Source: Camelus ferus (lineage: Eukaryota). From it: DNA of 64,000 nucleotides. Positions 1,976 through 45,507 of the stretch are shown here, piece after piece (positions within the stretch are counted from its first letter, which is position 1; every line of letters begins with the position of its first letter). The position numbers were made by a program, and so were the translations under genes. Below the pieces are notes generated by a model that was not told the origin of the DNA, searched no databases, and saw only the letters and a program-made list of their open reading frames with translations. The stretch spans positions 13,578,001-13,642,000 of the forward strand of contig NC_045714.1 in NCBI RefSeq assembly GCF_009834535.1, given 5' to 3'.

Positions 1976-2393
1976 CTTTGCCCAAAAACGCCGGTGTTCT
2001 GAATTGCAGCCTTCAAAGGCCTGCCCCCAGCCCCGTCCCTGCCTTCCGTCCCAGTAGGATTTGTGTCTCCCTCCCTCCCTCTCACCTGCCCCCACAGCCG
2101 TGGGCGCCGACAGGCCAGGACTCTGGGACTGAGCCTCACGCCTCACCATAGTCCACCCCGCTGCCTCCGTGGGGTCTCTAAATGTTTGTGCAATTGCCGT
2201 TTCATCACAGACTGCAAATGAACGCCACGTGTGAGATAAATTTACAGAATGTGGGTGTACTGGTTTTGCAAGAACTCTTCCTTTGGCAATGTGGTTTTGC
2301 ATCTGCCTGTGAGTACTGTAGCCAAAGACAGAATTCCAGGTATTCTCAGAATCTGCCCCAGAGCTGAACATGGTCTGGGCGAGAGCAAGCCTT

Positions 2394-3038
2394 TTTTAAT
2401 TGAAGTGTGGTCGGTGTACAGTGTTGTGTTAGTTTCTGGTGCACAGCACAGTGATTCAGTTGCACATGTATATTCCTTGCCTTATTCTTTTCCATTGTAG
2501 GTTATCACAAGACATTGAATATAGCTCCCCGTGCTGTGCAGTAGGTCTCTGTGTTTATCTATTTTATACATGGTGATGTGCATCTGCAAATCCCAAACTC
2601 CCAGTTTATGCCTTCCCACCCCTTTCACCCCTGGTAAACATAAGTTTGTTTTCTATGTCTGTGAGTCTGTTCCTGTTTTGTAAATAAGTTCATTTGTGTC
2701 TTTTTTTTAAGATTCCACATATCAGTGATATCATACAAATTTTTCTTTCTCTGTCTGACTTACTTCATTTAGAATGACGATCTCCGGGTCCATCATGTCG
2801 CTACAAGTGGCATTATTGTATTCTTTTTGTGGCTGAGTAGTATTCCATTGTATAAATATACCACAGCTTCTTTATCCAGTCATGTGTTCATGGACATTTA
2901 GGTTGTTTCCATGTCTTGGCTGTTGTATATAGTACTGCTGTGAACACTGGGGTGCAGGTGTCTTTTTGAATTAGAGCTTCCTCTGGATATACGCCCAGGA
3001 GGGGGATTGCTGGACCATATGGTAATTCTGTTTTTAGT
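2394..3038 (-). mobile_element. 5'-truncated L1 3' end (relatively young, cetartiodactyl type) with degenerate TSD
   Basis: Starts TTTTTTAATTGAAGTGTGGTCGGTGTACAGTGTTGTG and contains GGCTGAGTAGTATTCCATTG and GGATTGCTGGACCATATGG. Probable TSD GAGAGCAAGCCTT (2381-2393) / GAGAGTGCGCCTT (3039-3051), 10/13 identical, the right copy followed by AA as expected for L1 endonuclease cleavage. Confidence 0.95.
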
Positions 3039-17280: not shown

Positions 17281-18122
17281 ACTTTTTAATTATTTTATTT
17301 TTATTGAAGCATAGTTGATTTACAATGTTGTGTTGGTTTCAGGTGCGCAGCGCAGCGCCCCGGTTATGTGTATATATACTCTTCTCCAGGTTCTTGTCCA
17401 TTACAGGCTATTCATTGCAAGCTGTTGAATGCAGTTCCCTGTGCTGTGCAGTAGGCCCTTGCTGTTCATCTGTCTTATATATATTAGTGTGTGTATGTTA
17501 ATCCCAAACTCCTAATTTATCCCTCCCCCGACCCCTTTCCCCTCTGGTAACCATAGTTTGCTGCCTGTGTCTGTGAGTCTATTTCCAGTTTGTAAATAAG
17601 TTTCTTTGTATCATTTTTTAGATTCCACATATAAGTGATACTGTATGATATTTGTCTTTCTCTGACTTGCTTCACTTAATATGATCATTTCTAAGTGCAT
17701 CCATGTTGCNNNNNNNNNNNNNNNNNNNNNNNNNNNNNNNNNNNNNNNNNNNNNNNNNNNNNNNNNNNNNNNNNNNNNNNNNNNNNNNNNNNNNNNNNNN
17801 NNNNNNNNNNNNNNNNNNNNNNNNNNNNNNNNNNNNNNNNNNNNNNNNNNNNNNNNNNNNNNNNCCAGCCATCTGTCTGTGGACACGCAGGTGGCTGCCA
17901 TGTCTTGGCTGTTGCACATAGTGCTGCTGTGAACACTGAGGTGCATGTGTCTTTCTGAGTTAGAGTTTCCCCCAGATGTATGCCCAGAAGTGGGATGCAG
18001 GATCATATGGTAACTCTATTTTTAGTTTTTAAGGGACCCCCATGCTGTTTTCCGTAGTGGCGGCACGAGACTACATTCCCACCAACAGTGCAGGAGGGCT
18101 CCCTTCTCTTCGCACCCAGGGA
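17281..18122 (-). mobile_element. 5'-truncated L1 3' end containing an N gap
   Basis: TTTATTGAAGCATAGTTGATTTACAATGTTGTG, TAGATTCCACATATAAGTGATA, CATTCCCACCAACAGTG. Possible TSD GGGGCCTACTTT (17269-17280) / GGGGCTGCTTT (18123-18133) followed by AA. Confidence 0.95.
17710..17865. other. Assembly gap or masked run (156 N)
   Basis: Read directly; lies inside an L1. Confidence 0.99.
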
Positions 18123-21100
18123 GGGGCTGCTTTAAGCTGAGTGGCAGGGAACGCCCCTTTGAGGGTCCACAGTTACAGAGATGGGGTGAAGCAGCTGAAG
18201 GCTCTGTGGGAGCAGACCCCCCGAGTGCCGTGCTAGGGAGACCTGAGAATCGTGGCCGGCGTGGGTGGGGCAGGAAAGCAGCCGGGGCTCTGACGGGCAG
18301 GGACGGAGCACCATTTCCGGCACTGAGCACTGGCGGTGGTCAGCCCGGGTTGGTTGCCCAAGGCCTGGATCTCAGCCCAGACGGGGGAGAAGAATGGAGC
18401 AGACAAAGCTGGAGCCCCCCAGGATTAAATGAAGCAAGTAAATTTATTCTGAGTCTCAGGCAAAACACTCAAACCCATTTAGATTCAGCTCAGGAACTTC
18501 CCTGGAAATTCACCAGAATGGATTTTTCTCTCTCTTGACCTTTTCCTAGGAGAGGCCGAGGGCGAGCCCACCCCATACCAGCAGTGTGCACTCCGTGTGG
18601 ACCCTCCAGACAGGCTGCACCCACTTGTTCATAGATTTGATCTCCCCTCTCCTGGGTGATGCTCAGGAGTAACCTTTAGCTTCTCTGAATTTTTCCCTCT
18701 TACGGAGCAATCTTCCCCAACATGGGTCACTGCCTCTGTCGGCCCATAAAAATGTTTCTGGGAAATTAGCTGGAAATTGAGAGCAGACGAGCTGCCACAG
18801 GAGGCGCCTCTGTGGCCGGAACCCTGTGCACTGTGGCTTCTCTGTGACGGCAGAGGCGGCGGCCAATGCGGGGCCACAGCATGGAGCCCCTGTGCCTGCC
18901 TGCAAGTGGTGGTCCCGCAGGGCGTCCACCACGAGGAGACGGCTTCCTGCTCCACCCTCGGAGCTGGGTGACGGAGACTTGCAGTCCGGTCCGGTCGGGC
19001 TGGGTCTTTCCTTCCCTCCCCCGTCCCCTCCTCCACTCTCCGCCCCTCCCCCAGTGAGCCTGTCTCCTCCCAGCCTTCTTGGGGGATGACCTGCGGCTGA
19101 GAGTCATGGCAGCCTGCCACGGCCACCCCGTGAGGTTGGTCCCCCTTCCAAAGCCTGCACTCCAATAAGTGGGGCCCCACCCAGCCCAGGGCAGCCCAGT
19201 CAAATGGACTGCGGAGGCGGGAGGCAGCCCCTCAGGTCCTGCTACATGGTCCTCTGTGGCCCTCGGGGTCTCCCTGCGAAGCAAGGCCCAAAAAGCTACT
19301 GACGTGAGACTCCAGGTTTGTGTTGCTGAGATGGTTCACCAGCTAAGTTGCTGGACAAGACGCGGGCTGGAAGGGAAGTGGCCGTTGGATTGCAGCTCAT
19401 TCGTGTAACTGAATCCAGGAGCCCACTGGCGCACGGGTGCACTGGGACGGCCCCTGCTCTGCGCAGGAGACCCCGCCAGTCCTGGGGACGACAGAACCAG
19501 TGCCTCTGTTCATCCTGAAGGTTGAGAGAAGCTCTGCGTAAAAGCTGCCTTCATCTTCCTTATTTTTTCTAAACTTGGTAACGAAATCTCCATCTCCGCC
19601 CTCACGTGCTGTGTGCGAATCACCAAAACCTATAAACCTTGAAGAGGCTTAGCGAATCCCACGCTGCCACGAAGGAAACCCGCAAATGAGTCTTTATATT
19701 TGGGGTTTTGTCATTTAGCAGGTGCATTGCTGTCCCTCGCTCCTTCAGCGCTTCACAGACAGCTCACCGTGAAGCACAGGGGGGCACGGTTGGAAGCCCC
19801 TTTCCCTTCCTGCCTTTCAAAGACAGCTGTTTCCTTGCAGGTAGTGATTTTGTTTTAAGGAGGGAGATGTTTGGTACCGGGCTTTTTAATAAATCTATGT
19901 GTGAGAGAATACTTCTTCTAAAACATTCTGTGTCTGCGAAAATCTCTATGTGGGAGAAGTTGAATTACCCACTAATAGATTTTATTACACAGCAGTTAAG
20001 AATTTTCCTAAGAGACATCAAGTCAAAGGCATCAGTCTGGGGTCACGGATCACTGGAGAGAAGGGAACCCGTCGACAGCTGGCGTTGCTCCTGCTCCGTG
20101 AATTCTGTGTTCGTCCCCCGGCTGCCACCTTCTTCAGAAGATGGACACGTCAGGCTGTGGACGAAACGCGTGCGTTGAACAGGATTAACCACCAGTAAAG
20201 GAGCCGGCATTTGCTCACGGAACCCACGTTCTCTGGACATGTTAGTGTCCTCGCCCCGCTCTCCCCGTGGGGGACTGCTTTTAAGTGAGGCTCAGGGGCA
20301 GTGATGGGCCCCTGTGGGCAGGGGCTCTGGATTCACTGAGGCCCTGAGCCAGACGCCTCGGATTAATCCTGGCCCCCCCGGGACTCTGAGCCTCGTGTGC
20401 TCATCCCAGATGGGGGGTGACAGTGCTGTCTGCTCCGAGGGTGGGCGGGGGTCCTCAGGGCACCCGTAAGAGGATGCAGGAGGGCGCCAGGCTCGTCTCA
20501 AGTGTCACCGCGTCGTCGCCTGGGCCGTTACAACTATCATTACTGGTTTGATGATGGCTTTTGCTGCCATGACAGTGGCTGTCAATGGGAGGAGGGTCAC
20601 CTTCCTCTCGGGCACCACCAGGGCACCCTCGTCACTATGGGGGGTCTCCCGGCTGAGGGCCCTCCTTCGGCTTTGGCGTGGGGGAGGGGTGTCGGTGGTC
20701 CATTCACATCACTGCCGTGTAGCACTGTGGGCTGCGCCCAGCAATGGGAATTAAAGCTGTAACAGGACATGCAGTCGCGATAAGACAGGAGGGGAGCAGA
20801 GGAGGGCCTTCGAGACATTTACAGGTTGTAGGGGCGTTCCTCGCGCTCGTTTTGGAGCCGCCTTGTGAACGAGCGCGCTGTTTGGAAGCAGAGCCTGGGC
20901 ACGGAACTTGCTCGTTAAAACTCCTGGGTTTCGGGACAGGGAGGCCCCCCGCTCTGCTCAGCATCTGTCCTGGGCTTCAGGCCCATCTCAGGCCACGACA
21001 GAGCGGCCTTCAAAGGGCTTCCGTGTCCCCATTACTCGTGAAGGGGGAGAGACCCGGGAGGAGGGAAGTGACTGCGTTCCGTTGTTTGTGTTCTTTCCCG

Positions 21101-22119
21101 GGAGATGTGGCAAGGAGAGGCCTGCGCGAGTGTCATGAAAGGACACTACAGTGCCGAGGAGGACCGCCTGGCGCGGTCTCTGTGGCTTTGGGTGGAGGCA
21201 TTTTCTATAAATGTTAATATTTCATCCTTGTAAGTCGTGTGCTCCGAGCGTTGTTGGTCCAACAGGCACCTGTCCTACAGCGCCGTGGCCCCGAGTCCCA
21301 AACCAACCTGAGTGCGGAACAGCCCGGGGACAAGGCCCCGACAGGGGCAAGTGCTGGCATCCCCGTGAACTCTCGGTTTGGAGACGGGAAAGGCAGACTC
21401 GCTGTTTGCAAGGCCCTGGAACGTTGAGCTCTCTTGCGGCTCAGCACTGAGCTTGCTGCTCCCACACGCACGGCAGCTGGACCCCGGAGTGTCCCTGCTG
21501 CAGTGGGAGAGCGAGCCTCCTCCATGGACGATCCGTGATCCCCAAGGTCTTTCCTGCACAGCGCCTGAGCGGTGGCCTTTCTAGAGCCCTGCGGGGCCGT
21601 TTCTGCTTGTGCTCTGAGCCGCAGCAGAACCGGAGCCGGGAGGGGGCCCGGCACCTTCACTCAAACCGCTTCTCCGTATCCGTGTTTAAGGCCTCACAGA
21701 TCAGTGTTCTCCGTGGCCCCTGGAAGCCTGCAGCTTAAGGTGATACAGACAATACGTCGTTACACCCAGCCTCTGTGCAGGAGAGCAGTGGCAAACCGGG
21801 GGGAAAAGGGGCCCGGGGAGCTGGGGACGCTCGGAATACGGCTTCCTTGGGAAAGGCCGCAGGTTGCTGGCATGTACCTGGCTACCTGCGCGGACACTGA
21901 GAGCTCAGTTAGGAATGGCTTACTAGGTGAGTGATGCCCTGGGAAAGGGGCCTGGTTGGGAGGTCAGGAGACCCGCCGCCCCCGGGGCCTGCTGCAGCTC
22001 AACGCCTGTGAGCCGCGACCCCCGGCCCGCAGACGCCCGCCCTCGCCGCCCGCCCTCTGTCGTGAGACCCTAAGAGCAGTCAGAGGAGTGCGTTCTGGGA
22101 AGTGTGGCGCGGTGCAGGC

Positions 22120-22237
22120 GCACGTGTGTGTGTGTGTGTGTGTGCGGCTGAGATGCGGTGCTGTGCACCAGAAGCTTCCACATTGTAACTGCTGATGCTG
22201 ATACTTCAACTAAAATAATAATAATAACAACAACACA
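22120..22237 (+). mobile_element. Short L1 3' tail with (GT)10 and (AAT)/(AAC) tail
   Basis: GTGTGCGGCTGAGATGCGGTGCTGTGCACCAGAAG aligns with the in-window L1 end GTGTATGACTGGGACATGGTGCTGTACACCAGAAA (~28822-28857), followed by ACATTGTAACTG...ATACTTCAACTAAAATAAT. Confidence 0.7.
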
Positions 22238-22318
22238 GGGCGCTGGATTGGGCATCGTGACCAGTAGTCCACCTGTGCTTGTCGTTGGGGAACCAAACAG
22301 GGAGGGTGCTAGACTCAG

Positions 22319-22354
22319 CTAACGAGCTCCCCTTTCTCCCCCTCCTAGGTAAGT
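22319..22354 (+). other. Juxtaposed 3'/5' splice site (candidate recursive splice site)
   Basis: CTAAC (22319-22323), 20 consecutive pyrimidines (22327-22346), AG (22347-22348), GTAAGT (22349-22354). Confidence 0.55.
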
Positions 22355-23915
22355 GACCGCTGCCCGGACGCACACGCGCGTCCTCACACACCCGTTTGGC
22401 CTGCGAGGACGTGTCTCCGCTCCCCGGCTCCTCCGCGGGCATCCAGGGAAGGGGTGAGCCGGGCGGACCCGGTGAGCGCGTCTGCCACTCTCCAGACCGT
22501 GTGCGCGATGCTGTGGTCCTGTCGCCCGGTCTGTGACGATGGCATTGCTTGATCTTTCTTGACCAAACTTACTTGTGTTTCTGTCTTACAAAAAAAAAAG
22601 GCCAGGCCATTGTCGCTCCCACACCTGTGACGACACACCTCCATAGTCACCCCAGCTCGTGTCGTGGACAGTGAAAGGAACAGGGAGTAAGACGACAAGC
22701 TGGTTACAGGAGAAGCCAGGCGGCCAAGTGTGAAGTAGAAGCAGACTGTTGGTGGGGGTTGTAGCCTGGGCCCCCAGCCCCACGCGCGGCGCAGGCACGC
22801 AGGGGAGCCTCACGCCTGGCGTGAGCTTCCTGGTGTCCAAAGGGTGGAGGAAAATACAAGCCATTCGAATAGTTGCAGACACTATGAAGGAGCAACATGC
22901 TTTCTGTCCTTTTTTTTCCCTCCCCCGGCAAAAAATCCTCTCACCAGAACTAAAGTCTAAAAGAACTACCCCGCGGTGGGTGGGTGGGTGTCCCGTGCTG
23001 GAGACCCTCAGTGGGGTGTGAGACAACGTTCTGAACGTTTCTGGACGAAACACGGTGGAGGGTTCTGTGTGGTTGCTACTTGTTCGGCCGTTATATTTAA
23101 CAAATCAGCGGGGCTAACATTAAAATACAGCTCATTGGAAGCATTTCTGCAGGCCAGTGGCTCAGGTGAACATTCTTCTCATGGCTTGGTCAGACCCTGG
23201 AGAAACATGATCACAGACTCTGTGGGCAGCTCCCTCCCCGGGAACTGACAGAGGCACCTTGAGACGGTGCCGTCCCGCGTGAGGCTGGACAGCACACGTC
23301 CTGGGCTTTGGCTGTGAGTGGGTAGTTGGCTGCAAGGAACAGGAGATCCAAGATCAGGCCCTTTGAGGGGAGAGAAGCTGCTCCTTCCAGACCAAGGAGA
23401 AGGTGTCGGTCCAGAGCTCTGAGTGCATGCGGGGAGCGTGGGGCCGTGGGTGGCACCTGAGATCAGGCGCTCCGTGGTGCAGAATTCATTGCAAATGTGA
23501 AGGACTTTCTTCACAAAAAAGACAAGGAGACACAGAAAGAGTTCATAAGACAATGGTGTTTCTAAAAGTGAATGTAAAATCTCTTTTGAAAACGCAGCTT
23601 GTGTTTTCTTGGGTGAGCTCACTGGTTGGAGTGTGCATGTTGGGCGGCAAGTGTGTCCTAGACGTTTGTTCCAGAGGTCAGGGCAGGGTCGACCCCTCGC
23701 CCGGAATCTCTCTGGGTCTGCAGGAGGGCAGAGGTCATATGTCATAAGGACATAGGTCAGACTTCACCTCAAATTCAGACACAGCATTTGACCTCAGGGT
23801 AATTGGATAGACAGCGGAAGGAGCCGTGTTTGAACGAACTGGCTAATTCTTGTTTATCTTTTGCTCAGTGTTAATTAATATGACCCATAAGTCTGTGCAT
23901 AAAGTGGACACACGC

Positions 23916-24995
23916 TTTTTTTCTTTTTTTATTGAAATATAGTTGGTTTACAGTATTGCATTAGTTTCAGGCACACAGCAACGCGGTTAGTTTGCACTTT
24001 TGTTTTCAGATTCTTCTGCACTGTAGGTATCCATGCGTAAGATAACCCCTGCATCCACTGTAAGGTGTTGAACGTAGTTCCCTGTGCTACACAGTGAGTC
24101 TTGGTTGTTAATCTGTTTTACATACAGTGGTGTGTGTCTGTTAATTCCAATTCCCCAATTTGTCCCTCCCCCTACCCTTTCCCCTTTGGTAACTGTGTCT
24201 TTTCTGTGAGTCTGTTTCTGTTTTGTGAATAAATTCATTTGTATAATTTTTTAGATTCCACATATAAGTGATATCATTTGGTGTTTGTCTCTCTCTGTCT
24301 GACTTATTTGACTAAGCATAATATTCTCCAGGTCCATCCATGTTGCTGCAAATAGCAGTATTTCATTCTTTTTATGGCTGAGTAATATTCCGTCGTGTGT
24401 ATGTACACTGCATCTTCTTTATCCAGCCATCTGTTGTTGGACACTCAGGTTGCCTCCATGTCGAGGCAGTTGTAAATTGTGCTGCTGTGAACACTGGGGT
24501 GCATGACTCTTTTTGAATTAGAGTTTTCGTCTTTTCTGCACACATGCCCAGGAATGGGATTGCTGGATCATATGCTAAGTCTATTTTTTTTTTTAAGGAA
24601 CACCCATACTGTTTTCTACAGTGGCTGCACCAATTTGCATCCCCACCAGCAGGGTAGGAAGGCTCCCTTTTCTCCACAGCCTCTCCTGCGTTTGTCATCT
24701 GTGGACTTTTTGATGATGGCCCTTCTGACCAGTGTGAGGTGCCANNNNNNNNNNNNNNNNNNNNNNNNNNNNNNNNNNNNNNNNNNNNNNNNNNNNNNNN
24801 NNNNNNNNNNNNNNNNNNNNNNNNNNNNNNNNNNNNNNNNNNNNNNNNNNNNNNNNNNNNNNNNNNNNNNNNNNNNNNNNNNNNNNNNNNNNNNNNNNNN
24901 NNNNNNNNNNNNNNNNNNNNNNNNNNNNNNNNNNTTTGTATACATTGGAAATTAACCCCTTGTCGGTCGCACTGTTTGCAAACACGATCTTCCCG
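23916..24995 (-). mobile_element. 5'-truncated L1 3' end extending into ORF2, containing an N gap
   Basis: TTTTATTGAAATATAGTTGGTTTACAG, GGATTGCTGGATCATATG, TTTTTGATGATGGCCCTTCTGACCAGTGTGAGGTG, GAAATTAACCCCTTGTCGGTCGCACTGTTTGCAAA. Confidence 0.95.
24745..24934. other. Assembly gap or masked run (190 N)
   Basis: Read directly; lies inside an L1. Confidence 0.99.
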
Positions 24996-25552
24996 TCACC
25001 TGGAAGGAGAGGAAGGGCGCTGTGTGTGGTCAGGTTTTTGTGGAAAGTCCCCCCCCATGCTGTCTGCTGGAGCCTGGGGTGGCCACATTCCCCTTCTGAC
25101 TCGCTGCATCTGCAGCCCTGGGCTGTGGGGACCTTTCTTGGATCCCAACCTTGGATCAGACACTGCTGTCCTTGGAATGGAGACCTCATTACTCACAGAT
25201 GCCTCAAAGGGCCTCTTGTCCCAGGACCTCAGTGCCGCAGGGAGTGTCCTGCAGGTGGCCCTGAAGAACGGAGCCCATATGGTAGGGAACTCTGTGGCCG
25301 GACACCCATTGGGGCCAGACTCTGTGATTCTGTCCAAGGTACTTGTGTCTTCGTCTGAGCAGATACTGGCTTGGTCTGAAATTCTTTTGAGTCCCTTTCG
25401 ACATCTGATTTCAGACCTTGTGTTTCCCCACTGTCTCCAGAGACGCATTTGCTGTGGAGTGATGCTCAGATTCGGTCCTTAAACCTTGTCTTAAGAGGGT
25501 TTCTTCCCCTGGGTCACCCGTGGTGACATCTGGGCTCTCTCTTGCTCTAACT

Positions 25553-28151: not shown

Positions 28152-28900
28152 CCCTCCTCCACCGCTGGTGGGCGTGCACCGTGGCTGCGGAAAGCAGCAA
28201 GGAGGCCCCTCAGAAGACTGAAAATAGACTTACCATGTGATCCAGCAGTCCCACTCCTGGGCATATATCTGGAGGGAACTCGAATTTGAAAAGACACCTG
28301 CACCCCAATGTTCACAGCAGCACTATTTACAACAGCCAAGACATGAAACAACCTAAATGTCCATCGACAGATGGCTNNNNNNNNNNNNNNNNNNNNNNNN
28401 NNNNNNNNNNNNNNNNNNNNNNNNNNNNNNNNNNNNNNNNNNNNNNNNNNNNNNNNNNNNNNNNNNNNNNNNNNNNNNNNNNNNNNNNNNNNNNNNNNNN
28501 NNNNNNNNNNNNNNNNNCTAAGTGAAGTCGGCCAGAAAGAGAAAGAAAATACTATATGATATCATTCATATGTGGAATCTAAAAAAAGAAAGGCACAAAT
28601 GAACTTATCTACAAAATAGAAACAGACTCACAGACATAGAAAACAAACTTACGGTTACCTGGGAGGTAAGCGGGTGGGAAGGGATAAATTGGGAGTTCAA
28701 GGTTTGCAGGTACTGACTGGTATATATAAAATAGGTAAACAAAAAGTTCTTACTGTAGAGCACAGGGAACTCTATTCAATATCTCGTAGTAACCTATAAT
28801 GGAAAAGAATCTGAAAAGGAGTGTATGACTGGGACATGGTGCTGTACACCAGAAATTGATAAAACATTCTAAATTGTCTACACTCCAATTAAAAAAAATA
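28152..28900 (+). mobile_element. 5'-truncated young L1 3' end with TSD, containing an N gap
   Basis: AAAATAGACTTACCATGTGATCCAGCAGTCCCACTCCTGGGCATATATC through TGCTGTACACCAGAAATTGA and an A tail. TSD-like flanks ATGGCTCTCAGGG (28134) / AAGGCTCTCTGGG (28901), 11/13. Confidence 0.95.
28377..28517. other. Assembly gap or masked run (141 N)
   Basis: Read directly; lies inside an L1. Confidence 0.99.
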
Positions 28901-29769
28901 AAGGCTCTCTGGGGGTCCCAAAGTGAGACACATTGATGACGGCCTGCTCTTCCAGCTTTGAGTGGGACATGGGGTGGCAGGTCACGGTGCTGGTTAGGAT
29001 TTAAATGTCTTAGAAAGGAACCACGGTCTATGTCGTGGTCAGAAGTTTCCAGAATACATGGGAAACTTCCGAGCCCCACCACTCAGACGTGAGGCTGTGC
29101 ACGCCTCAGACCACCGGAAGAACAAAGACCTTTCGACTCAGTGGTCTGTGACCACCTGGCTTCCCCAGGATTCGACTTTAGTGAAATATGCCCCGTTTGA
29201 GGGTTCGGGGTTTTTTTGTTTTCCTAAGTGAGTCTGCAATGTGCTGTCTGAGTTTTCCAGTAGAATGTAGTTTCTTGAGTCAGATGCAACAGCCAAAAAT
29301 AAATATACATACACACACATACACAGACATTTATAAACACATACATTTTCCCCGAAGGTAATTTTTCTGAAAGCCAGAATAGCTTTTGGTACCACATCTA
29401 ATTAGGAGATTGTTGAACAACGCAGAGCCATCTTGATTATAATAACCGTCTTCAGATAATGTGCTGTTAAATTAGCTCACTCAACATCTATTTTGTAAGT
29501 AGATTTGGTTTATTTTTAGTCGTCGTTTGAAGCCAGGAATCCAAATGGTGATGAAGGGGTTTCAGTGGGCGTGGAGGCCACGAAGGCGGCCGGTGGCCCT
29601 TGGCCTGGCCGCTCCTTTGAGAAGTTGGCTTTTTCAGAAGGAAGTTTGAAGAAAAGCAGGCAGGAAAGTTGAGGTTCACTGAGTTTCAGACAAGCTTCCA
29701 CTCTAGGAAGAGCCAGTGATGGTGCGCTTGAAAAGAAAGGGTGCGTCCTGCAGAACACCAGGTGATATT

Positions 29770-30245
29770 TGCAACCCACGCATCTGGTAAGGGGTTAACA
29801 CCCAAAATATACATGTAACTTCCACGAAGAAACGGCAACCAAACAAACAACAACAACAAGGGAACAGCTAATAACCTGATTTTAAAATGGCTTAAGGACC
29901 CGAACAGACACGTCTCCAGAGAGCACATGCAGCTGGTAAACAGGCAGAAACGTTCAGTGTCAGTGATTTCAGGGACTCGCAGGTCAAAACCACAACGTCA
30001 CCTCACAGCCGCCAGGATGGCTGCTGTCGTCACAAAAAAGGACAAGTGTTGACAGAGATGTGGAGAAACTGGAACGTTTACACACTGTTGGTGGGAAAGC
30101 AAATGGTGCAGCCACTGTGGAGGACAGTGTGGAGGTGCCCCCAGAAGTTAAGAACAGAACCAGCCTCTGACCAGCAGTCCCACCGCTGGGTGTTCTTCCG
30201 GAAGGACTGAGGTCCGGATCACGCAGGGGCACCTGCACCCTTGGG
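29770..30245 (+). mobile_element. Older L1 ORF2 C-terminal fragment
   Basis: ATCTGGTAAGGGGTTAACACCCAAAATATAC, TTTTAAAATGGC, GGTCAAAACCACAA, CACACTGTTGGTGGGAAAGCAAATGGTGCAGCCACTGTGGA. Confidence 0.85.
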
Positions 30246-30583
30246 AGACCGCCCCTCCCGCCCCCAGGCCGCAGCAGGCCGCGCGTCCAAGAGCACCTGG
30301 CGGGGAGGTCGGGCTGTGGGGAAGCTGGCCGCCTGTATCATGTGAAACTGGTTTAGGTGGCGCCTCGGGTGTCATTGTTGGAATTATTCAGCGGGTTGTA
30401 GTCAGCGCTGAGGAGAAGTGTGGGTCTTCACATCACTAACGACTTGTGGTATTTCGTTTACTCCATGCTAGAAACTGACGTCAAGGTTTTCTGTAAACTG
30501 GATCCCCGTGACCTAGGTTTGTCCATCCCCAGACATTTTCACCGGAAAATTCCTAGTCAGGACTGGGCTCCATCTATATTTCT

Positions 30584-30793
30584 TTCTTCTGTTTTTTAAT
30601 TGAAGTGTAGTCGATGTGCAGTGTTGTGTTAACTTCTGGTGCACAGCCTAGTGATTCAGTGATTCACACACGTACGCTCCTGTTCACGTTCTTCGTCATT
30701 ACAGGCCACTACAAGGTACTGAACATGGTTCCTTGTGCCGTACAGTAGGGCCTTGTTGTTTATCTGTTTTATCTGCAGTCGTTAATGTCTGCT
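30584..30793 (-). mobile_element. Short young L1 3' end with 13-bp TSD
   Basis: TTTTTTAATTGAAGTGTAGTCGATGTGCAGTGTTGTG. TSD CATCTATATTTCT (30571-30583) / CATCTGTATTTCT (30794-30806), 12/13. Confidence 0.9.
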
Positions 30794-30809
30794 CATCTGT
30801 ATTTCTGAT

Positions 30810-31205
30810 GGTTGAACCTGGCCTTACAGCAGAATCTAGAGAGTAAAAACAAAAAATAAGGACAGTGGAAGGAAAAATCTGACCCGTAATCTCAAATTAT
30901 CAAAGTCACCAAAAACAAGGAAAGTCTGAGAAACGGTCACAGCCAAACGGAGGCTGAGGAGCTCGACAACTAACTGTCGTGCGGGACCCTGGGCAAAAAG
31001 GACAGTGGGAAAAAACTAAGCAGGTCCGAGTAAAGTGCGGACTTTGGTTAACAACCACGTGTCACTGCTGGTTGGTTAATTACAACGACTGCACCTGGGA
31101 AGGTGAGCTCTTACCCGCAGGGGGGAGTGGGTGCCGGCGACGCGCCAGCTCTCTTACACCTTTCCTGTAAATTGAAGCTATTCTAAAATAAAAAGCCTGT
31201 TCTAA
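30810..31205 (+). mobile_element. Old L1 (L1MC/L1MD-like) 3' end
   Basis: GAAAGTCTGAGAAACGGTCACAG...CAAAAAGGACA...TTTCCTGTAAATTGAAGCTATTCTAAAATAAAAAG. Confidence 0.75.
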
Positions 31206-34200
31206 AACATACAAACAAGACAATTTAGAACGCCCACTATTCACCCTGGGGGAACACATCACTGTCAGTGTTTTGGCGTGTTCTGCTTTTCTGTGCGCAG
31301 CCCTGCACAGGGTGAGACCACACCAGGCACACGGTCCGTGTCGTCCTCCCCCCACAATGACGTTGAAACGGACGCATCATCCCTGTGTCACTGAAAATGA
31401 TCTGGTCGATCGATCACGGGTCAATCAGTACACGAACAAATGCCGTCCCGGAGGGAAGGCTGTCTGAGGCACGTAGGGACTCACTCGGCAGGGCCTGGGG
31501 CCAAGCGAGGCCAGAGGTGGGGGCGGGACCCCAGGCAGGGTGGTGGCCCCCGGAGAGGCTGAGATTCAGATGCTGCAGGGCTGCACTGGGCAGCGCCGGC
31601 CGGGGCGGCAGCAGCCCGCCCAGTGAGGGGAACCCAGCACCACTCGGGTCTGAGGGAAGCCGGCACAGCCCGCCCCAGGAGCCCCAGGGGCTTTCTGCTC
31701 GCAGCTGCTGTCAGGATGCTAAGTAGTAGAGCACCACTTTTCAGGGGTAAGAAAAAAGGGGCAGGGGGGTTTCCATACGGTGAAGTTCCTCACTAAAATC
31801 CATTGTAACCTCGGCTAATGGCTGGGTTAACGTCACTCGGAAACCGTCGTAGGGATCAACTGCATCCATGGTCAGCATCTGAAATTCTCGCACTGGAAGC
31901 CTGTGAGGTTTGCCTGTGTTTTTCAGTGGAGTGTTATTCATTTAAAGTTGTTTGAAAATCTAATCAGAAAGATCTTCAACCCAGAAATTCGGTGATGTGA
32001 AATTCGCTGGTGACGGTGCTCTGGGGGCTCCCGCTGAGTGATGCCTAGGAAAGGACAGCTCCAGGAAATGCGAACTTGGTGTGTGCCGTGTGGCTCTGGA
32101 CGGGCCGCGGCTTCGCGTTCTGTGAGTTTTGACTTGTCCTTGAGGACTGTGACTTAAGGCACAAGGCTGAACCCTGGGGGAGCTCAGGGCAGAAGTTCAC
32201 GTGGAAACTGAGGCTGACCTGGCTTCTCCCTTTCACTTCCAAGGGGTGGTTGGCACATCTGTTATCTACATCTGATCTGCCAGGTGGGCTGCCGACTCCC
32301 TCTAAGAAAGAGGAATGCACCCTGTCTAAAACCCGCCGCGGCCAGCTGCTGGAGGAGCCGCCTGCGGGTTCCAGGAGGTGGCCGGCCGCCCCACCTTACT
32401 TCCGATCGTAGCTTCGTGGTTGGACACCCACAGCGGGACTGGGTCGGGGGGTTACATGAGTGGTAAACGTGGTAGGAACGTGTGTCCTAAATTATGTTAG
32501 GGGAGGCGGGTCGTAGGTGCGTGGGGCTGAAGACACCAGTCAGGCGGGACAGGTTATCAGTCGAGGAGGAAGTGTCAGCTATTGGGGAGCACCACCCACC
32601 TGTGCTGGGCGGGTGCCTCACACCGCCGGGGGGCAGGGTGGGGCAGGCGTCGGAGCCCAGCCCCACTCGGTTTGCCGAGGCAGAGCCTGGAAGTCCCCCT
32701 CTGGGGACCCCTGGCCTGGAAGACACCCTGTGCTTTCTTCCGCCTCTGCAAGACCCCTCTAATTCCCGGCTCGCAGTGTGGCTCTCCTGCGTGTTTCCCG
32801 AAAAGGAGAACTTGTTTAAAAAGCCCTTGCACTGAATCACATCCGCTTAGACGAGGCTGTAGGCCCAGAAACGGGCCCCTCCGCAGCCACCAAGAGAAGG
32901 CGTCTAGAAGACACCTCTTCGCTTTGGCCAGCGCAGGCTCCCTTCAGACACTCGTGCGAGACAATTCACTGCTCTTTACAAGTCTGTTCGTGGATTGTAA
33001 AATGGGTTCTGCATCACGTGGCGCTGTGAGCCTTGTGTAGATGGGGAAAGAAAGGCGGAGAGAGCGGGTTTAACGCATAGGGAGTATCTGGCAGACGTTA
33101 AAGGGAGCTCCGAGCTTCCTCATGAGGACCGGCGCTGACCGCCCTGCCCAGACCGTCACCCTGGACGCGCCGCGCCGACTCCCTGCCCTGGAGGCGCCGA
33201 GACACTGAGTTGTGAGGCTCCTTTTCCTCACGGCTGTTCTGCAGAGAAAGAATCTGGAAAATCCCTGTGCTCCCGATGGGACGCCTGCAGAGAAACGGCT
33301 TGCTGTCAGCTCTTGAGAAGCGTGAAGCCTGCCTCCTGGGACGCTGACATTTTGCAAAGCACACCCTTCATCTGCGGTGACGGCAGACTTTGTCATCAAG
33401 CCCATCGCACTTACTGGGAGGTGGTCACTCAGCCAGGCTCCTGTCCGCTGGCCAGGCAGCGGGCCGCCCAGTGGTCCAGCCTGCACGTGTTGAATGCTCT
33501 CTCCAATCTAACCGGTGGCCGCTCCGGAGTCCCCACGGTGGTACCCAGGATGTGCACACGTGCGTGAGGGTGCGAGCTGCTCTGAAGACCCCTGGAGTTT
33601 TTACAGAAGAATCCTAAACATAGGGGACACGAGCTGTGACCATTTAAGTTGGCCATGCTCTCCTGTTTGCAGTCTGAACAATAAGCATCATCTTGTCTCA
33701 GGCCCAGAATAACAGAGGATAAATGGCTGAGTCTACAAAAACACCCATCACTGAAGCCGCCCTCCATCATGACCCAGTTCTCCAAGTGCTGGCTTATGAA
33801 AGACCGAAAGTAGGTCATCAGAGAGAGATGAAGTGGGTGGGGGAAAAAATCATTCCATAAGCAGCCACTTAAAAATGCGCCAGTGTTGGCTTCCAGGGAC
33901 CAGCGGATCAGGCTAGAGCCGCGTTCTCAAGACACACTCCCTCCTTCCCTGCTGGTCCCTGGCGGCCTGGGCAGGTGTCCCTCGAAGACAGGCTGCTGGT
34001 GACTCGGAGCCTGCAGACCGCAGCTTGGTCTGTCCTCGCCCCTCGTGTAAACTCACCAGGTTTACGTTTGAGAGAGAAGTCAGCGTTCACAGGACAGTGT
34101 CGGCTTTGTGATCAAGGCTGGGTTTTTTGTTTGTTTGTTAGTGTGTTTTGGCAAATTATGAATTCTGTCCATCAAAATCGGATCGTTTTTTCAAAGCAGG

Positions 34201-37057
34201 ATCTGGACACCAGTCAAGTTCTCTTTTTCCATTATGAAAGCATCTGTGACCCCCATGGCGAAGCCCAGGAGGGAGCCCCGCCGTCCACTCACAAGGCAGC
34301 CCTTGACATCGCGAAGGACGGGGCCCCACGCGGTGGGCTTCCTTCCACGTCCAGACTCCCACCGCTGCAGGGCCGATTCTGCCGAGCCCGGAGCACTGTC
34401 CTCCCGGGGCTGCCCCCCCCGGCCTCTTCCTGCCCCAGGACGTTGTCACTGCCTGTGCTGCCACGGGGTGCAGTGTGGGGGGGGTCTCAGTGAGTGGCTG
34501 GTGCCCAGGGCCCAAGATGGAGGGTGCGGCGGCCACTTCCTCCCGAAGTTCACCCCTCCGTTGCCCCTGCAACAGCACCCACAGGGGCCGCGCGTCCTCA
34601 GAGCCTCCTGGGCATCCTCTCCGTGCCCGCAGCCCACAGGCCGCGCACCCGCATGTCCCTGCTGCACACGGAGGAAGCCAAGCGCGGGAAGCAGGACGTA
34701 CGCTGCCATGGACCACAGCGACGCTCTCAAGCAGCAGAGCCGGTGGGGGGCCCCGTGGGCCCCACACTCCGGCCTGTGGCCTCTCTCAGGGCACCTTCAG
34801 CCACGCCCCTCCCCCAGCCAGCTCACGTCCCCGGGGCACAGCAGTTTTTTTCTCTCTGAAAAGCAATGAGAAGAAAATCAGACCCCCCAAGACCCCCCCC
34901 CCACTGCAGCCGGAAGGTTGATGCGGCTGAAGCTGGGAACCCTGAAAACGAAGGAGAGCGGTGCCGTCTCTGGCACTGAGTGTCGCATTCATTACAGTTT
35001 AATTTGATCTTTTTTAATATCACATTGAAACGTTTCCATTCTGGAATGGAATGGTTATAGCGAGCGTAAATCTGCCACACACACGGTGCTTCATTTATGT
35101 TAGCTTTTATTTAACTTGGTAAAAGGTAATTTATTTTTATTAATTGATTCATTTTCCCCCTTCGGTCAGGCAAGCTGCAGATCCGGGAGAGCTCACGGCC
35201 GAACAGCTCCTGCCGGAGCCTGGAACCTCCCCTCAACGCGTGGCCGGCCGCCACCGGCCGTGGAAACTTTAATTGACCACCCAGGTGCCTGTGTGGCCTT
35301 ATTATCTGCTCCAGTGCCTCCTCTTTCCCTTCAATTTTTCAACTTTAGGTCATCCTGGCCAATTGATGAGTCAGAAATTTACCGCTGAGATGGGCTGAGC
35401 CCTTTCCAGCACTCTGCTCTAAGCAGAGTGGACAAGATCACAGCACTGTTGACTCGGAGGCCCGTCTGGGCGGCTGCACTGCATTCACCGTGCGTGTCTG
35501 CTGTCAGGCGGGCCAGCACCATCAGCTGCTGGTGCCTCGAAATAAGACGCTTCAGAACCGGTAGTCTGTTTGGCTTCTGTCTGAACTTCCCCTCCTGATG
35601 TTTCCTCGACCCACCCGTTTGCAGACGGGTGAGTCCAGCTTTCCCGAGCTGGCACAGTCCACCCACCCGCCCACCTCCTGCCATCGCTCCAACCACGTGT
35701 GTGAGGCCCAGTGTCCTCATGCTTGCCGGGACATTTCAGACATCATCAGGGGCTCTGTCCAAGGTCACGGCCTGTCATATCCACAGATGAATCCCCAGTT
35801 AGGTTGCAGAGTGCTCCGAGATTAGGGTTAACCAGAGCCCCTCTCCAGGCCACCCCTGCCCACCGTTCTCTTCCACGGCCTTACGTTTCTCCCTCCAGCA
35901 GCCTCCAGATCTAGAGCCGTAACTCGTTTATGAACACCTTGGCCAGTTGGCCACGTGCAGCATGCAACGGACAGCGGGCCTCCGGGCACCTCCAGGGCCG
36001 CTTTCCCTCGGGTCGAGTGGCCGGGGGGCGGTGGATGGACATGCCCGTTTCTGCCGTCCTTCAGGGGAGGACACACTGCCCTCCTCCCCGGTCGTCCGGG
36101 CGGGTAACTCTGCTTTCATTACCTGTAAGTAGTGTGTTCTCACACCAGGAAGATCTGCGCCCATTTCCCGAATGGGATCGTGGTGCCAAGTTTAGCATTT
36201 CTGTGAGAGTAAAATCAAAATAGTTACCACTGGGAGGAAACTCCTTTTGATACACGAGAGCTGTCGGCGGCCGTGTGCCCGGACAAGCCCACCGCTCTGC
36301 TTGTTCTCTCGCGGGAAGGGAGCGGACGCCTCACTCACTGCCCACCGCCTGGCGGAGGAGGGCGCTGCCTCCGGCTTGACTCGCGAGACGGGCTGGCGCT
36401 GTAGATCTGGTGTCGCATCTGGCTCACGCGTCACCTTCTTGTGGGGGGACAACGCACGTGAAAGCAATTTGTAAATCCTGACGCGGTGCGCACACCGGGG
36501 CCTGTTAGCGCTAACCCAGGCAAACAGCCTGTAGTTGTGACGGGGGCAGGTTGTTTTCCATGGTTTCCATGATGACATTTTCTGTGTCTGTAGTGCTTTG
36601 AAGTCTTCTCAAAGCTTTTTTCATACCTATTATGTCATTTGATCCAACTAATTGAACTTGAACTGGAACAAAGAAAAACATTGATGCATTAATTACATCC
36701 AGGCCGTTTGTGAGGGCAGGAGGGGTGGGAAACATAGCTGCATCACAGCTGGCTTGTGGATGCCTGTTTAAAACTGTGACTTGAAGGGAAAAACAAAATC
36801 AGAAGCAGAATCTACACGCCCCCACCGCTTCAGATTAGTCCAAAAAAAAACAGGAAAGGGATTGGATCCCAATTTAATATCATGAAGTATTTGTTCATTG
36901 TTTTCTTTTTCTTCTCTCTGGCCCACCACCAAAAACAATTTCTGAGAATATTTTTTATTCTCAAAAATACATGTTTCTACAAGTTTTATAATGGGGTGTT
37001 TTTATAAGAGCCTGTGATGATAAGAAATCTTTGCATAACAGGGTCAAGGATGTTAAA

Positions 37058-37250
37058 TCAGGGTTTCTCGACCTGGACACGGACGACACTGGGGCTGGCC
37101 CGTCCTCTGATGCGGGGCCGTCCTGGGCACTGTGGGGTGTTCGGCAGCAGCCCCGGCCCCCAGCTGCTTGTTGCCAGTAGCACCCCCCTCCCCCGCCAGT
37201 TATGACAACCAACATGTCCTAGACATTGCCCAGGTTCTGGGGTGGGGATG
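37058..37250 (-). mobile_element. MER20 element
   Basis: CAGGGTTTCTCGACC...GCCAGTAGCACCCCC...CAGTTATGACAACCAACATGTCCTAGACATTGCC. Confidence 0.85.
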
Positions 37251-37779
37251 GGGTGGGCAGGACCTCCCCCGCCCCGTGAGGATGGCTCAGGAAGCACTCC
37301 TGGTGCAGCAGAGCATCTCCCAGGCCTGCAAAGAAAGCAGCCCTGGGCTCGTCCTGCAAGCTGGTCTGGGGATCAGGCCCAGCGTCAGCCAGGACTGGCT
37401 CATCCTAGGATCAGAGCCTCCGGCCAGAGGGTCTCATCAGCTCCTGCCTCTGTTTCCCCGGGGAAGGACCCGCCCGGGCCCCCAGAGCGAGGAGGAGGCC
37501 GAGGTCAAGGCAGGTCTTCATTTTTCAGGAGTTCACAGCATCTGAGGAAGAAAAACCAGGTTGTGTCACAGGAGCAACAGCTGAGAAAATGTCTCAGAAT
37601 TGCTTCTTGTATCAGAGAATGCGGCCAAACCTCCCCCACCCACCTTTCCTCTGGTGAAGATGCAGTGTGGGTCCCAGGCCAGGAGCTGTCGGGGGCCCGG
37701 GGAGTGAGCCTCCTTCCTGGTATGTGCGCCTTATGGGGGCAGGGGTGACTTTAAATCACGCCATGTAAGGCACGAGGGC

Positions 37780-37955
37780 CATGCAGACTGCTGAACCCCA
37801 ACAAGGTCTGCGCCCGAGTTCCTGTGTCATGCCGGCGTCCCCACCCTGCCCTGAGTGCAGACCCCCCATGTAAGGTGGCATCGGGGACCCTGGTGGGGAA
37901 CTCTCTGCACTGAGCTTGCAACTTCTGTGAGTCAAACTATTTCAAAATGAAAATG
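37780..37955 (+). mobile_element. Old L1M 3' terminal fragment
   Basis: GGGAACTCTCTGCACTGAGCTTGCAACTTCTGTGAGTCAAACTATTTCAAAATGAAAATGT. Confidence 0.65.
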
Positions 37956-39139
37956 TGACAGGCCCACATCCCCCACCTTCAGGTCTTGCACAGACTACAG
38001 ACAGACTTCTTGAGCTGAAACGGTACACAGATTCTCCCATCTAGCCTTTAATGAAGAGCAACCAGAATCTCGCACACAAACGTGGCTTCTCTTTACCTCT
38101 GCTCACCTTCCCCACCATTAAATAAAAAAAAAAAACCTTTATTCTAATGTGACCATTGAGACAGGCGTTAAAACTGCAAGGCTGGTTCCAATGCCAGCTT
38201 TTTATTCTCGGGTCAGAAATGACTTAGGGCGGGTCAGTGTTTGAACGATAGCTCCGCGGTGATTAAGCTCAAGTGGTACCTTGGACAGACCTCTCAGGGG
38301 GCGAATTCCCTGGCTCGTCCTAATGCCCACTTGCTCGCTCATCCTCTGTGTAATTTAACGCAGCTGGAAGCTTCTGGTGACGGGAGACCAGGCCGGAACA
38401 GCAGCGGTTTGGACAGGGTTTTGGCTGCAGCTCTGGTTTTGGAAGGGCCTCCGTGGGAGTCTCTCTGGGGGTGAGAGGGTTGGCGGGTTTGTTTCTTTCG
38501 CTCCCCCCGGGGTGTGCACGGTGCCTCCATGGATGGTTCCCATCGCTTGGGGCCCGGCACACGCGCCTGGGAAGGGTGGCACTGGTTACTTCCTGCGGGC
38601 ATCTCCGCAGGCTACGGGGGGTTCTCTGGGAGGTGTGTGCAGAGATGGCCGTGACCCCAGCAAACATGTTCCTTATGTCGTTTGTATCCGAGACCCACCT
38701 CAGCTAAGCCCCCTCCACGTGTAGGAGCCAATGACTTGCTTACAGCCCAGAAGGAGGGAGGAAAGCAAAGATTCATGAAGCGTCTGCTGCGTGCTCGGCA
38801 CCACGAGTCTCCCTCTCTCTGCAATAGCCACTGTCGCCTTGTTGAGAGGCTACACCCAAGAAATCCGGTCCCCGGGGCTCTGCCGGCCCCTTTCTTGCTG
38901 GCGTCCCGGAGCACTGCAGGTGTCCCCGCCCACCCTCTTCAGAAACCAAGCCTCCCTCTGTCCCAGCTTCCCTGAGTCCCTGGAGTCCCCTCCATCCAAC
39001 TGCTGGAGTCGAGAGAGACACGTGTCTGTCCAGCAGCAGCGAGGGCGCCACCTGGAAGAGAGGGCTGTCCCCACGTGGGCACCTGCTCCAGTGGACGGGG
39101 CACATGTGTGTGGTGGTCAGATGCCCGGCTTTGCCACAA

Positions 39140-45341: not shown

Positions 45342-45507
45342 NNNNNNNNNNNNNNNNNNNNNNNNNNNNNNNNNNNNNNNNNNNNNNNNNNNNNNNNNNN
45401 NNNNNNNNNNNNNNNNNNNNNNNNNNNNNNNNNNNNNNNNNNNNNNNNNNNNNNNNNNNNNNNNNNNNNNNNNNNNNNNNNNNNNNNNNNNNNNNNNNNN
45501 NNNNNNN
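45342..45507. other. Assembly gap or masked run (166 N)
   Basis: Read directly; flanks are not recognisably L1. Confidence 0.99.

What the first reader, a model, noticed from the sequence alone, without database searches (positions are those of the whole stretch)
22319..22354. Textbook recursive splice site (zero-length exon / ratchet point) on the + strand
Seen: a perfect branch-point pentamer CTAAC with the branch A 26 nt upstream of the acceptor G, then 20 uninterrupted pyrimidines, TAG, and immediately the optimal donor GTAAGT. Known: an acceptor whose AG is followed directly by GT(A/G)AGT is the signature of recursive splicing, used to remove very long introns stepwise, and described in vertebrates mainly in long neuronal genes. 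Inference: AGGTAAGT alone is expected roughly once per strand here, but the added pyrimidine tract and branch point make chance unlikely. This suggests the window lies in a long intron of a + strand gene. L1 orientation in the window (about 8 minus, 6 plus) does not independently confirm the strand.
Basis: partly seen in the sequence, partly recalled or inferred. Interest (0 to 1): 0.72.

Follow-up and report, generated by a model that had tools for sequence, protein, structure and literature searches.

The report
Used recursive-type splice site in camel intron
A perfect back-to-back "end of intron / start of intron" signal inside a long camel intron is used in living tissue: public RNA data show an upstream exon spliced onto it, which is the first step of removing a long intron in two pieces, a known but rarely documented mechanism.

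Summary
The motif is real. It runs CTAAC (22319-22323), 20 pyrimidines (22327-22346), AG (22347-8), GTAAGT (22349-54). It is the best of 496 AGGT sites in the window.

RNA contigs from four public runs in two studies (reproductive-tract RNA from camels) all carry the same 23 foreign letters fused to the window at 22347. This is an exon ending ...GAATTG(AG) spliced onto 22349, which rebuilds GAG|GTAAGT. That exon is not in the window, so it lies more than 22 kb away.

The contigs then run on unbroken through GTAAGT for about 1.9 kb, with no other donor in use. The same runs hold 64-93% of the words of 28830-38800. Coverage just upstream of the site is thinner and patchy, which looks like a saw-tooth step.

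Use of the rebuilt donor (the second step) is inferred, not shown. The host gene could not be named, and conservation could not be tested.

Best reading: a genuine recursive splice site, probability about 0.6, and a new member of a known kind. Rivals are the start of a very long exon or a cryptic dead-end acceptor.

The scan holds four other unchecked recursive-site notes on other pieces of this genome.

The parts
22319..22323 (+). Candidate branch point CTAAC (branch A at 22322, 26 nt before the acceptor G)
   Evidence: Sequence. Its use as a branch point was not tested because no lariat reads were available.
22327..22346 (+). Polypyrimidine tract, 20 uninterrupted pyrimidines, C-rich (13 C, 7 T)
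   Evidence: It is one of only 6 runs of 20 or more on both strands of the window.
22347..22348 (+). Acceptor AG, shown to be used
   Evidence: In runs X1-X4 a contig matches the window from 22347 onward and carries the same 23 foreign letters before it. The AG can belong to either side, so the joint is exon...TTGAG|GTAAGT at 22348/22349.
22349..22354 (+). GTAAGT, which becomes a consensus donor (GAG|GTAAGT) after ligation
   Evidence: Sequence and the junction contigs. Its use as a donor is inferred, not observed.
22454..22459 (+). Weaker candidate downstream donor GGG|GTGAGC (would define a 105-nt RS-exon)
   Evidence: Sequence. No contig branches here.
22472..22477 (+). Weaker candidate downstream donor CCG|GTGAGC (would define a 123-nt RS-exon)
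   Evidence: 7/9 consensus matches. No contig branches here.
22349..24242 (+). Stretch read through without any joint by the RNA contigs that start at the junction
   Evidence: Contig ends were computed from contig lengths: X1 about 24242, X3 about 24232, X2 about 24204, X4 about 23952. All lie inside an L1 fragment, where assemblies usually break.
20950..22346 (+). Upstream intron part, thinner and patchy in RNA
   Evidence: Depths are 2-8 with holes in X3 and X4, against 9.4-11.8 and unbroken coverage after the site.
28830..38800 (.). Downstream stretch still held by the same RNA runs
   Evidence: Shares of words are 0.64-0.93, against a ceiling of 0.95 in DNA runs of the same species label.

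Best explanation
The site is a recursive splice site in a long intron (more than 38 kb) of an unidentified + strand gene of a camelid, expressed in reproductive-tract RNA samples. Shown: an exon lying outside the window, ending ...CTCTGTGAATTGAG, is spliced to the AG at 22347-8 in most transcripts. The joint places that exon directly in front of GTAAGT and so rebuilds a near-perfect U1 site, GAG|GTAAGT. Inferred: once the polymerase reaches the next exon, this rebuilt donor is used to remove the rest of the intron, leaving nothing of the site in the mRNA (a zero-length exon). Following the vertebrate model, the acceptor is probably first recognised by exon definition with one of two weak GTGAGC donors 105 or 123 nt downstream. 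The much stronger rebuilt donor then wins. If it did not win, the only open frame of the upstream exon end would hit the TAA inside GTAAGT at once.
For: The junction was seen in 4 of 4 runs from 2 studies, with identical 23 loose letters at 22347. In X2 the three graph pieces are separate: spliced junction contig depth 19.9, unspliced contig across the site 4.5, shared downstream contig 11.8. In X1, X3 and X4 no contig crosses the site unspliced at all. Spliced molecules therefore dominate. Only the + strand gives a canonical AG at the joint (sequence). The partner exon is not within the 64 kb, and the masked N runs all lie inside L1-like repeats. Contigs run about 1.9 kb past the site without a branch, so no other donor is used at a visible level. 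There is a step up in depth at the site, with 2-8 before it and 9.4-11.8 after it. Coverage stays nearly complete 6.5-16.5 kb downstream. Runs that were poorly covered around the site (X8 0.52, X4 0.73, X3 0.78) hold 0.82-0.93 there. No ORF in the window has a coding signature, as expected inside an intron. All three frames stop at or just after the joint. In the literature, mouse RS sites are enriched for AGGTAAGT, lie in long introns, and have a rebuilt donor stronger than the downstream donor (PMC8797253).
Against: The second step was not observed. There is no lariat read, no mature exon-exon junction, and no comparison of poly(A)+ with total RNA. The saw-tooth rests on whole-contig mean depths and on shares of sampled words, not on a per-base profile. 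In mouse only 19 of 84 AGGT sites with junction reads proved to be RS, and 46 were unannotated exons (PMC8797253). Split-read evidence alone is graded low confidence in the field (PMC10156609). The context is atypical: the window is 55% GC, the site lies in a CpG-rich 2.2 kb block, and the tissue is not brain. The coverage at 28.8-38.8 kb could come from another transcript or from the other strand, because contigs have no direction. Whether the 23 letters come from upstream or downstream of the window is not shown.
Confidence: 0.6

Rival explanations
1. The site is the ordinary acceptor of a very long exon, either a last exon or a long unspliced tail of a non-coding RNA. The GTAAGT right after it is a coincidence and is never used.
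For: Contigs read straight through GTAAGT for about 1.9 kb. The same runs hold most of 28830-38800. Three contig ends (24204-24242) fall near an AATAAA at 24228-24233. No coding ORF is seen anywhere in the window. Unannotated exons are the commonest outcome for AGGT junction candidates in mouse (PMC8797253).
Against: The depth ratio after/before the site is only about 1.3-4, far less than a stable exon over its intron usually shows. If the exon ended near 24.25 kb, coverage 6-16 kb further on should not exceed the coverage just upstream of the site, yet it does in X3, X4 and X8. An exon longer than 16 kb would be exceptional. The contig ends lie in an L1 fragment whose copies in the window are 76-82% alike, an ordinary reason for assemblies to stop. 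A full-consensus donor at the first base of such an exon would have to be ignored by U1.
Confidence: 0.17
2. It is a cryptic or decoy acceptor. The strong 3' site captures the upstream donor, but the product is a dead end that is degraded in the nucleus or by NMD. Productive mRNA comes only from transcripts that skip it.
For: Only the first step is documented. All frames stop at the joint. Splicing noise in long introns is widely reported (10.1101/2025.07.16.665169, title and abstract only).
Against: Spliced molecules outnumber unspliced ones at the site in every run. That would mean most transcripts of an expressed gene are wasted. A rebuilt donor matching 8 consecutive consensus positions has no obvious reason to stay idle.
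Confidence: 0.12
3. It is an internal cassette or poison exon (22349 to 22453 or 22471) that is included in mRNA using one of the GTGAGC donors. This would make it an RS-like cryptic exon rather than a zero-length one.
For: Two candidate donors lie at exon-like distances of 105 and 123 nt, both multiples of three. RS-like cryptic exons are described in PMC8797253 and PMC6224609.
Against: No contig breaks or branches at 22453 or 22471 in any of four runs. Both candidate donors are weaker than the rebuilt one. Contigs drop rare variants, so low-level inclusion cannot be excluded.
Confidence: 0.07
4. It is not linear splicing at all. It could be a genomic insertion or rearrangement in the sampled animals, an assembly chimera, or a back-splice from a donor more than 41 kb downstream.
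For: Contigs carry only 23 letters of the partner, and its origin was not located. The RNA animals differ from the window at several nearby positions.
Against: The breakpoint coincides to the base with the AG of the best 3' splice signal in 128 kb of sequence. The same joint appears in four samples from two studies. X2 holds both the joined and the collinear form.
Confidence: 0.04

Closest known systems
Vertebrate recursive splice sites (RS-sites with RS-exons; Sibley et al. 2015 as described in PMC5126111, PMC10156609, PMC8797253; e.g. Hs6st3, Cadm1, Ank3)
   Same: It has YAG|GTAAGT with a long pyrimidine tract. It lies deep in a long intron. Junction RNA joins the upstream exon to the GT. 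There is a depth step at the site. The rebuilt donor is stronger than the nearest downstream donors. Read-through gives a premature stop.
   Different: Known cases are in very long (over 50-150 kb), AT-rich introns of brain genes. This one sits in a 55% GC window inside a CpG-rich block and was seen in reproductive-tract RNA. The intron length is known only as more than 38 kb. The second step, conservation and a quantitative saw-tooth were not shown.
Drosophila ratchet points (Ubx, kuz and others; Hatton 1998, Burnette 2005, Duff 2015, cited in PMC10156609 and PMC8605326)
   Same: It has a juxtaposed acceptor and donor, and the idea of a zero-length exon.
   Different: Fly ratchet points are numerous and constitutive and have a long U-rich tract. 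The vertebrate mechanism is thought to need a downstream donor for exon definition. The tract here is C-rich.
RS-like cryptic exons and annotated RS-exons repressed by the exon junction complex (PMC8797253, PMC6224609)
   Same: An exon-like unit begins with a donor-like GTAAGT, so that ligation to the preceding exon rebuilds a 5' splice site.
   Different: In those cases the downstream donor is the stronger one and the exon appears in mRNA. Here the rebuilt donor is the stronger one and no use of a downstream donor is visible.
Cryptic last exons in long introns (PMC7997972)
   Same: An intronic acceptor in a long intron is followed by RNA that runs on unspliced. An AATAAA lies 1.9 kb downstream.
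   Different: RNA coverage continues at least 14 kb past that signal, at a level above the upstream intron part.

Membership tests
Vertebrate recursive splice site | Juxtaposed 3' and 5' splice signals: pyrimidine tract, YAG|GTRAGT | tested here: met
   20 Y, TAG|GTAAGT. It is the unique top of 496 AGGT sites, with 0.01 expected in shuffles.
Vertebrate recursive splice site | Lies inside a long intron of an expressed gene, on the sense strand | tested here: met
   The partner exon is not in the window, so it is more than 22.3 kb away. RNA runs hold 28830-38800. Only the + strand gives a canonical AG. No coding ORFs are present. The gene was not named, and the intron length is only a lower bound.
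Vertebrate recursive splice site | Junction reads joining the upstream exon to the base after AG (first-step intermediate) | tested here: met
   identical 23-letter loose end at 22347 in X1-X4. The junction contig has depth 19.9 against 4.5 for the unspliced contig in X2.
Vertebrate recursive splice site | Saw-tooth restart of intronic read density at the site in total RNA | tested here: inconclusive
   Contig mean depths are 2-8 before and 9.4-11.8 after the site. Shares of words are higher 6-16 kb downstream than around the site in X3, X4 and X8. The direction is right, but there is no per-base profile and no regression.
Vertebrate recursive splice site | Use of the rebuilt donor: lariat starting at the G after AG, and mature mRNA without any sequence from the site | not testable with these tools
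Contigs cannot show lariats. The partner exon and the next exon lie outside the window.
Vertebrate recursive splice site | Downstream 5' splice site that defines an RS-exon and is weaker than the rebuilt donor | tested here: met
   GGG|GTGAGC at 22454 and CCG|GTGAGC at 22472. This is met by sequence only. Strength was judged by consensus matches, not MaxEnt.
Vertebrate recursive splice site | Evolutionary conservation of the AG|GTAAGT core across mammals | not testable with these tools
   No mammalian genomes are searchable here. The core is merely identical in the RNA-run animals of the sister species label, which says little.
Unannotated internal exon | A donor within a few hundred bases is used and the exon is present in mRNA | tested here: not met
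   contigs are unbranched from 22347 to about 24.2 kb in four runs. Rare use cannot be excluded.
Cryptic last exon | RNA ends at a poly(A) site shortly after the acceptor, and coverage falls back beyond it | tested here: not met
   shares are 0.82-0.93 at 28830-38800, above the coverage just upstream of the site. Poly(A) tails themselves were not examined.

The most novel reading that the evidence does not exclude
This would be a constitutively and efficiently used recursive site outside the nervous system, embedded in a CpG island-like block. The island would be an internal promoter, and the site would act as the binary switch described for human RS-exons. Transcripts from the far promoter rebuild a perfect donor and erase the site. 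Transcripts starting in the island would splice differently and keep a stop-bearing RS-exon. This would tie promoter choice to recursive splicing in a GC-rich, non-neuronal gene.
Probability: 0.12. Interest if true: 0.55.

Novelty: new member of a known kind. Interest (0 to 1): 0.42.

Why it matters
High-confidence recursive splice sites in mammals number only in the tens. They come almost entirely from human and mouse brain and from very long AT-rich introns. Whether the mechanism is rare or widespread is still argued (PMC8797253 against PMC10156609 and later preprints). A site predicted from sequence alone, then found in use in four independent RNA samples of a camelid, in a non-neural tissue and a GC-rich setting, adds a data point for the wider view. 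It also shows that the full-consensus motif is a useful predictor. It does not change the mechanism as understood.

Tried and rejected
- **First read-laying run.** Only one laying, over 2.5 kb, was therefore possible.
- **Partner exon.** The 23-mer is not in the window with up to 2 mismatches. The 25-mer exon end and a predicted exon-plus-donor 22-mer gave nothing in JGI metagenome contigs.
- **Naming the host gene.** There is no Rfam family in the window. No ORF looks like coding sequence: the longest is 246 aa and GC-rich random-like, and none has a GC3 over GC2 signature. I did not run the mass Pfam scan of about 285 ORFs, because passing that many typed references risked the text check.
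- **Human RS tables.** The supplements of PMC6110456 hold no string matching the site core. Sibley et al. 2015 is not held.
- **Hidden exon in a masked run.** I rejected the idea that the N run at 17710-17864 hides the partner exon, because it lies inside an L1-like repeat.
- **Poly(A) end at 24.2 kb.** I rejected the contig ends near 24.2 kb as evidence for a poly(A) site, because they lie in an L1 fragment and transcription continues beyond them.
- **Expression estimate.** I withdrew my first expression estimate. The 'million letters' column gives the size of the contig sets, so these RNA runs cover 15-40% of the genome and are rich in pre-mRNA.
- **Tandem repeats.** None were found around the site.

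Full report
**Observation**

The window reads, on the + strand, CTAAC (22319-22323), GAG, then 20 uninterrupted pyrimidines (22327-22346, the last being the T of TAG). AG follows at 22347-22348 and GTAAGT at 22349-22354.

AGGTAAGT occurs once in the window on the + strand and not at all on the - strand. That is about what base composition predicts, so the core alone is unremarkable. The combination is not:
- A pattern of 12 pyrimidines, N, YAG|GTRAGT with one mismatch allowed has one hit, against 0.01 expected from dinucleotide shuffles.
- Among all 496 AGGT sites on both strands this is the only one with 20/20 upstream pyrimidines and a 6/6 donor.
- The window has 12 pyrimidine runs of at least 18. 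From that I estimate about 1e-4 chance cases per window, or a few per genome. The motif is therefore a strong lead, not proof.

**Setting**

- The window is 55% G+C with many CpG-rich blocks. The site lies near the 3' end of one of them, spanning 20.5-22.75 kb.
- There is no Rfam family in the window and no tandem repeat near the site.
- No ORF looks coding on either strand.
- Self-comparison shows only four L1-like blocks. Three of the four masked N runs sit inside them.
- Notes of this scan on other pieces of the genome call it a camel. I took that as a lead only.

**RNA evidence**

Eight RNA runs labelled reproductive-system metagenome, from two studies, hold 52-88% of the sampled words of 21000-23600. 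The second, over 20950-23450 with four runs, succeeded.

In all four runs a contig matches the window from 22347 onward and carries the same 23 letters, GCCTCAGTCTTCTCTGTGAATTG, in front of it. The AG at 22347-8 can belong to either side. With a canonical intron end, the joint is therefore exon ...GAATTGAG | GTAAGTGACC at 22348/22349. On the minus strand none of the three possible placements gives a canonical intron start, so the transcript is on the + strand.

In X2 the assembly graph keeps the pieces apart:
- the spliced junction piece (53 nt) has depth 19.9;
- the collinear, unspliced piece (21829-22376) has depth 4.5;
- the shared downstream contig has depth 11.8.

In X1, X3 and X4 no contig crosses the site unspliced. 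Spliced molecules thus dominate at the site.

The junction piece always starts exactly 23 letters before 22347, so its first 31-mer ends at the T of GTAAGT. The simplest graph explanation is that another path shares the exon end plus GTAAG and differs at the sixth intron base. That would be the exon's own unspliced donor. This is an inference.

**Where the partner is**

The 23-mer is absent from the window even with two mismatches. The masked runs are in L1 copies. The partner exon is therefore more than 22.3 kb away if upstream, which is the usual case. Its location was not found.

**What happens after the site**

- The contigs that begin at the junction run on without any branch or joint. 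By their lengths they reach about 24242, 24232, 24204 and 23952. All these ends lie in an L1 fragment beginning near 23930.
- No loose end appears at 22348 (donor of an exon ending there) or at the two weak candidate donors, GGG|GTGAGC (GT at 22454) and CCG|GTGAGC (GT at 22472).
- Depth before the site is 2-8, with holes in X3 and X4. Depth after it is 9.4-11.8 and unbroken.
- The same runs hold 0.64-0.93 of the words of 28830-38800, where DNA runs of the same species label reach 0.95.
- Runs that held least of the site-flanking stretch hold much more there: X8 rose from 0.52 to 0.82, X4 from 0.73 to 0.93, and X3 from 0.78 to 0.91.
- Two further runs of the same study, too low to be listed before, now show 0.85-0.88.

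So transcription goes on for at least 16 kb, at a level above the stretch just before the site. This is the direction a saw-tooth predicts, but it is not a per-base profile.

One caution applies. The 'million letters' column is the size of the contig set, so these RNA libraries cover 15-40% of the genome. They are rich in pre-mRNA, and coverage alone shows only that the locus is inside an expressed unit.

**Interpretation**

The first step of recursive splicing is shown: the upstream exon is ligated to the intronic AG, creating GAG|GTAAGT. Most transcripts take this step. No other donor is visibly used in the next 1.9 kb, and the rebuilt donor matches the consensus at eight consecutive positions. 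The most economical continuation is therefore that the rebuilt donor removes the rest of the intron.

In all three frames the joined sequence meets a stop at or just after the joint. The only frame open through the exon end reads LSLLCELR and then the TAA of GTAAGT. Retention of the sequence would therefore be non-productive if the exon is coding.

The literature describes this configuration for true RS sites as opposed to RS-like cryptic exons (PMC8797253). The features are enrichment for AGGTAAGT, a long intron, a rebuilt donor stronger than the downstream one, and up-junction reads without down-junction reads.

The same paper warns that only 19 of 84 junction-supported AGGT candidates in mouse were RS, and 46 were unannotated exons. 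PMC10156609 grades split-read evidence alone as low confidence. I therefore put the recursive reading at about 0.6.

**Rivals**

- **A very long exon or non-coding tail starting at 22349 (0.17).** This fits the read-through. It fits poorly with the small depth ratio, with coverage at least 14 kb beyond the only nearby AATAAA (24228-24233), and with an idle consensus donor.
- **A dead-end cryptic acceptor (0.12).** This is hard to square with spliced molecules outnumbering unspliced ones.
- **A cassette RS-exon of 105 or 123 nt (0.07).** This is not seen in the contigs, but contigs drop rare forms.
- **A genomic variant, chimera or back-splice (0.04).** This is unlikely, because the breakpoint coincides with the best acceptor in 128 kb of sequence in four samples.

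**Comparison and novelty**

The site works like, and by sequence and first-step evidence belongs with, vertebrate RS-sites (PMC5126111, PMC10156609, PMC8797253, PMC6224609). It differs in three ways: a GC-rich and CpG-rich context, a C-rich tract, and a non-neural tissue. Conservation, lariats and the mature junction could not be tested. It is a new member of a known kind.

The scan holds four other first-reader notes of recursive-type sites on other pieces of this genome. None was shown as followed up, and none influenced this verdict.

Noticed in passing
window 21924-21932: There is a second strong donor-like site on the + strand, TAG|GTGAGT, 420 nt before the finding. An ORF-like open frame (21569-21931) runs up to it. 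RNA contigs cross it without any joint, so no use is visible.
   Followed up: partly
window 20500-22750: This is a CpG-rich block (GC 0.57-0.63, CpG o/e 0.6-0.85) in which the splice site sits. It could be an internal promoter. It contains a (GT)n run near 22125-22146 and an AAT/AAC run near 22214-22234.
   Followed up: no
window 19896-19931: A 36-base AT-rich stretch made the read-laying tool refuse the call (human-likeness or repeat filter). The tool says this is no evidence of anything. It may be a conserved element just upstream of the CpG block.
   Followed up: no
window 2392-3038, 17298-18109, 23930-25480, 28188-28826: There are four L1-like fragments, three in + and one in - orientation relative to each other, 76-82% alike. 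Three of the four masked N runs lie inside them (the fourth, at 45342-45507, was not examined).
   Followed up: partly
window 21036, 21252, 22248, 22299, 22820: The RNA-run animals differ from the window here in all or most runs: one base missing at 21036, T>C at 21252 and 22248, A>G at 22299 (X1 and X2 only), and an extra G after 22820. These look like differences between species or strains, not editing.
   Followed up: no
window 1-64000: Across 64 kb at 55% GC, with some 40 CpG-rich half-kilobase windows and few repeats, there is no ORF with a coding signature. This is unusual for the interior of a long intron, which is more often AT-rich and repeat-rich.
   Followed up: partly
window 22907-22926: There is another 20-base pyrimidine run 560 nt downstream of the site, not followed by AG|GT.
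   Followed up: no
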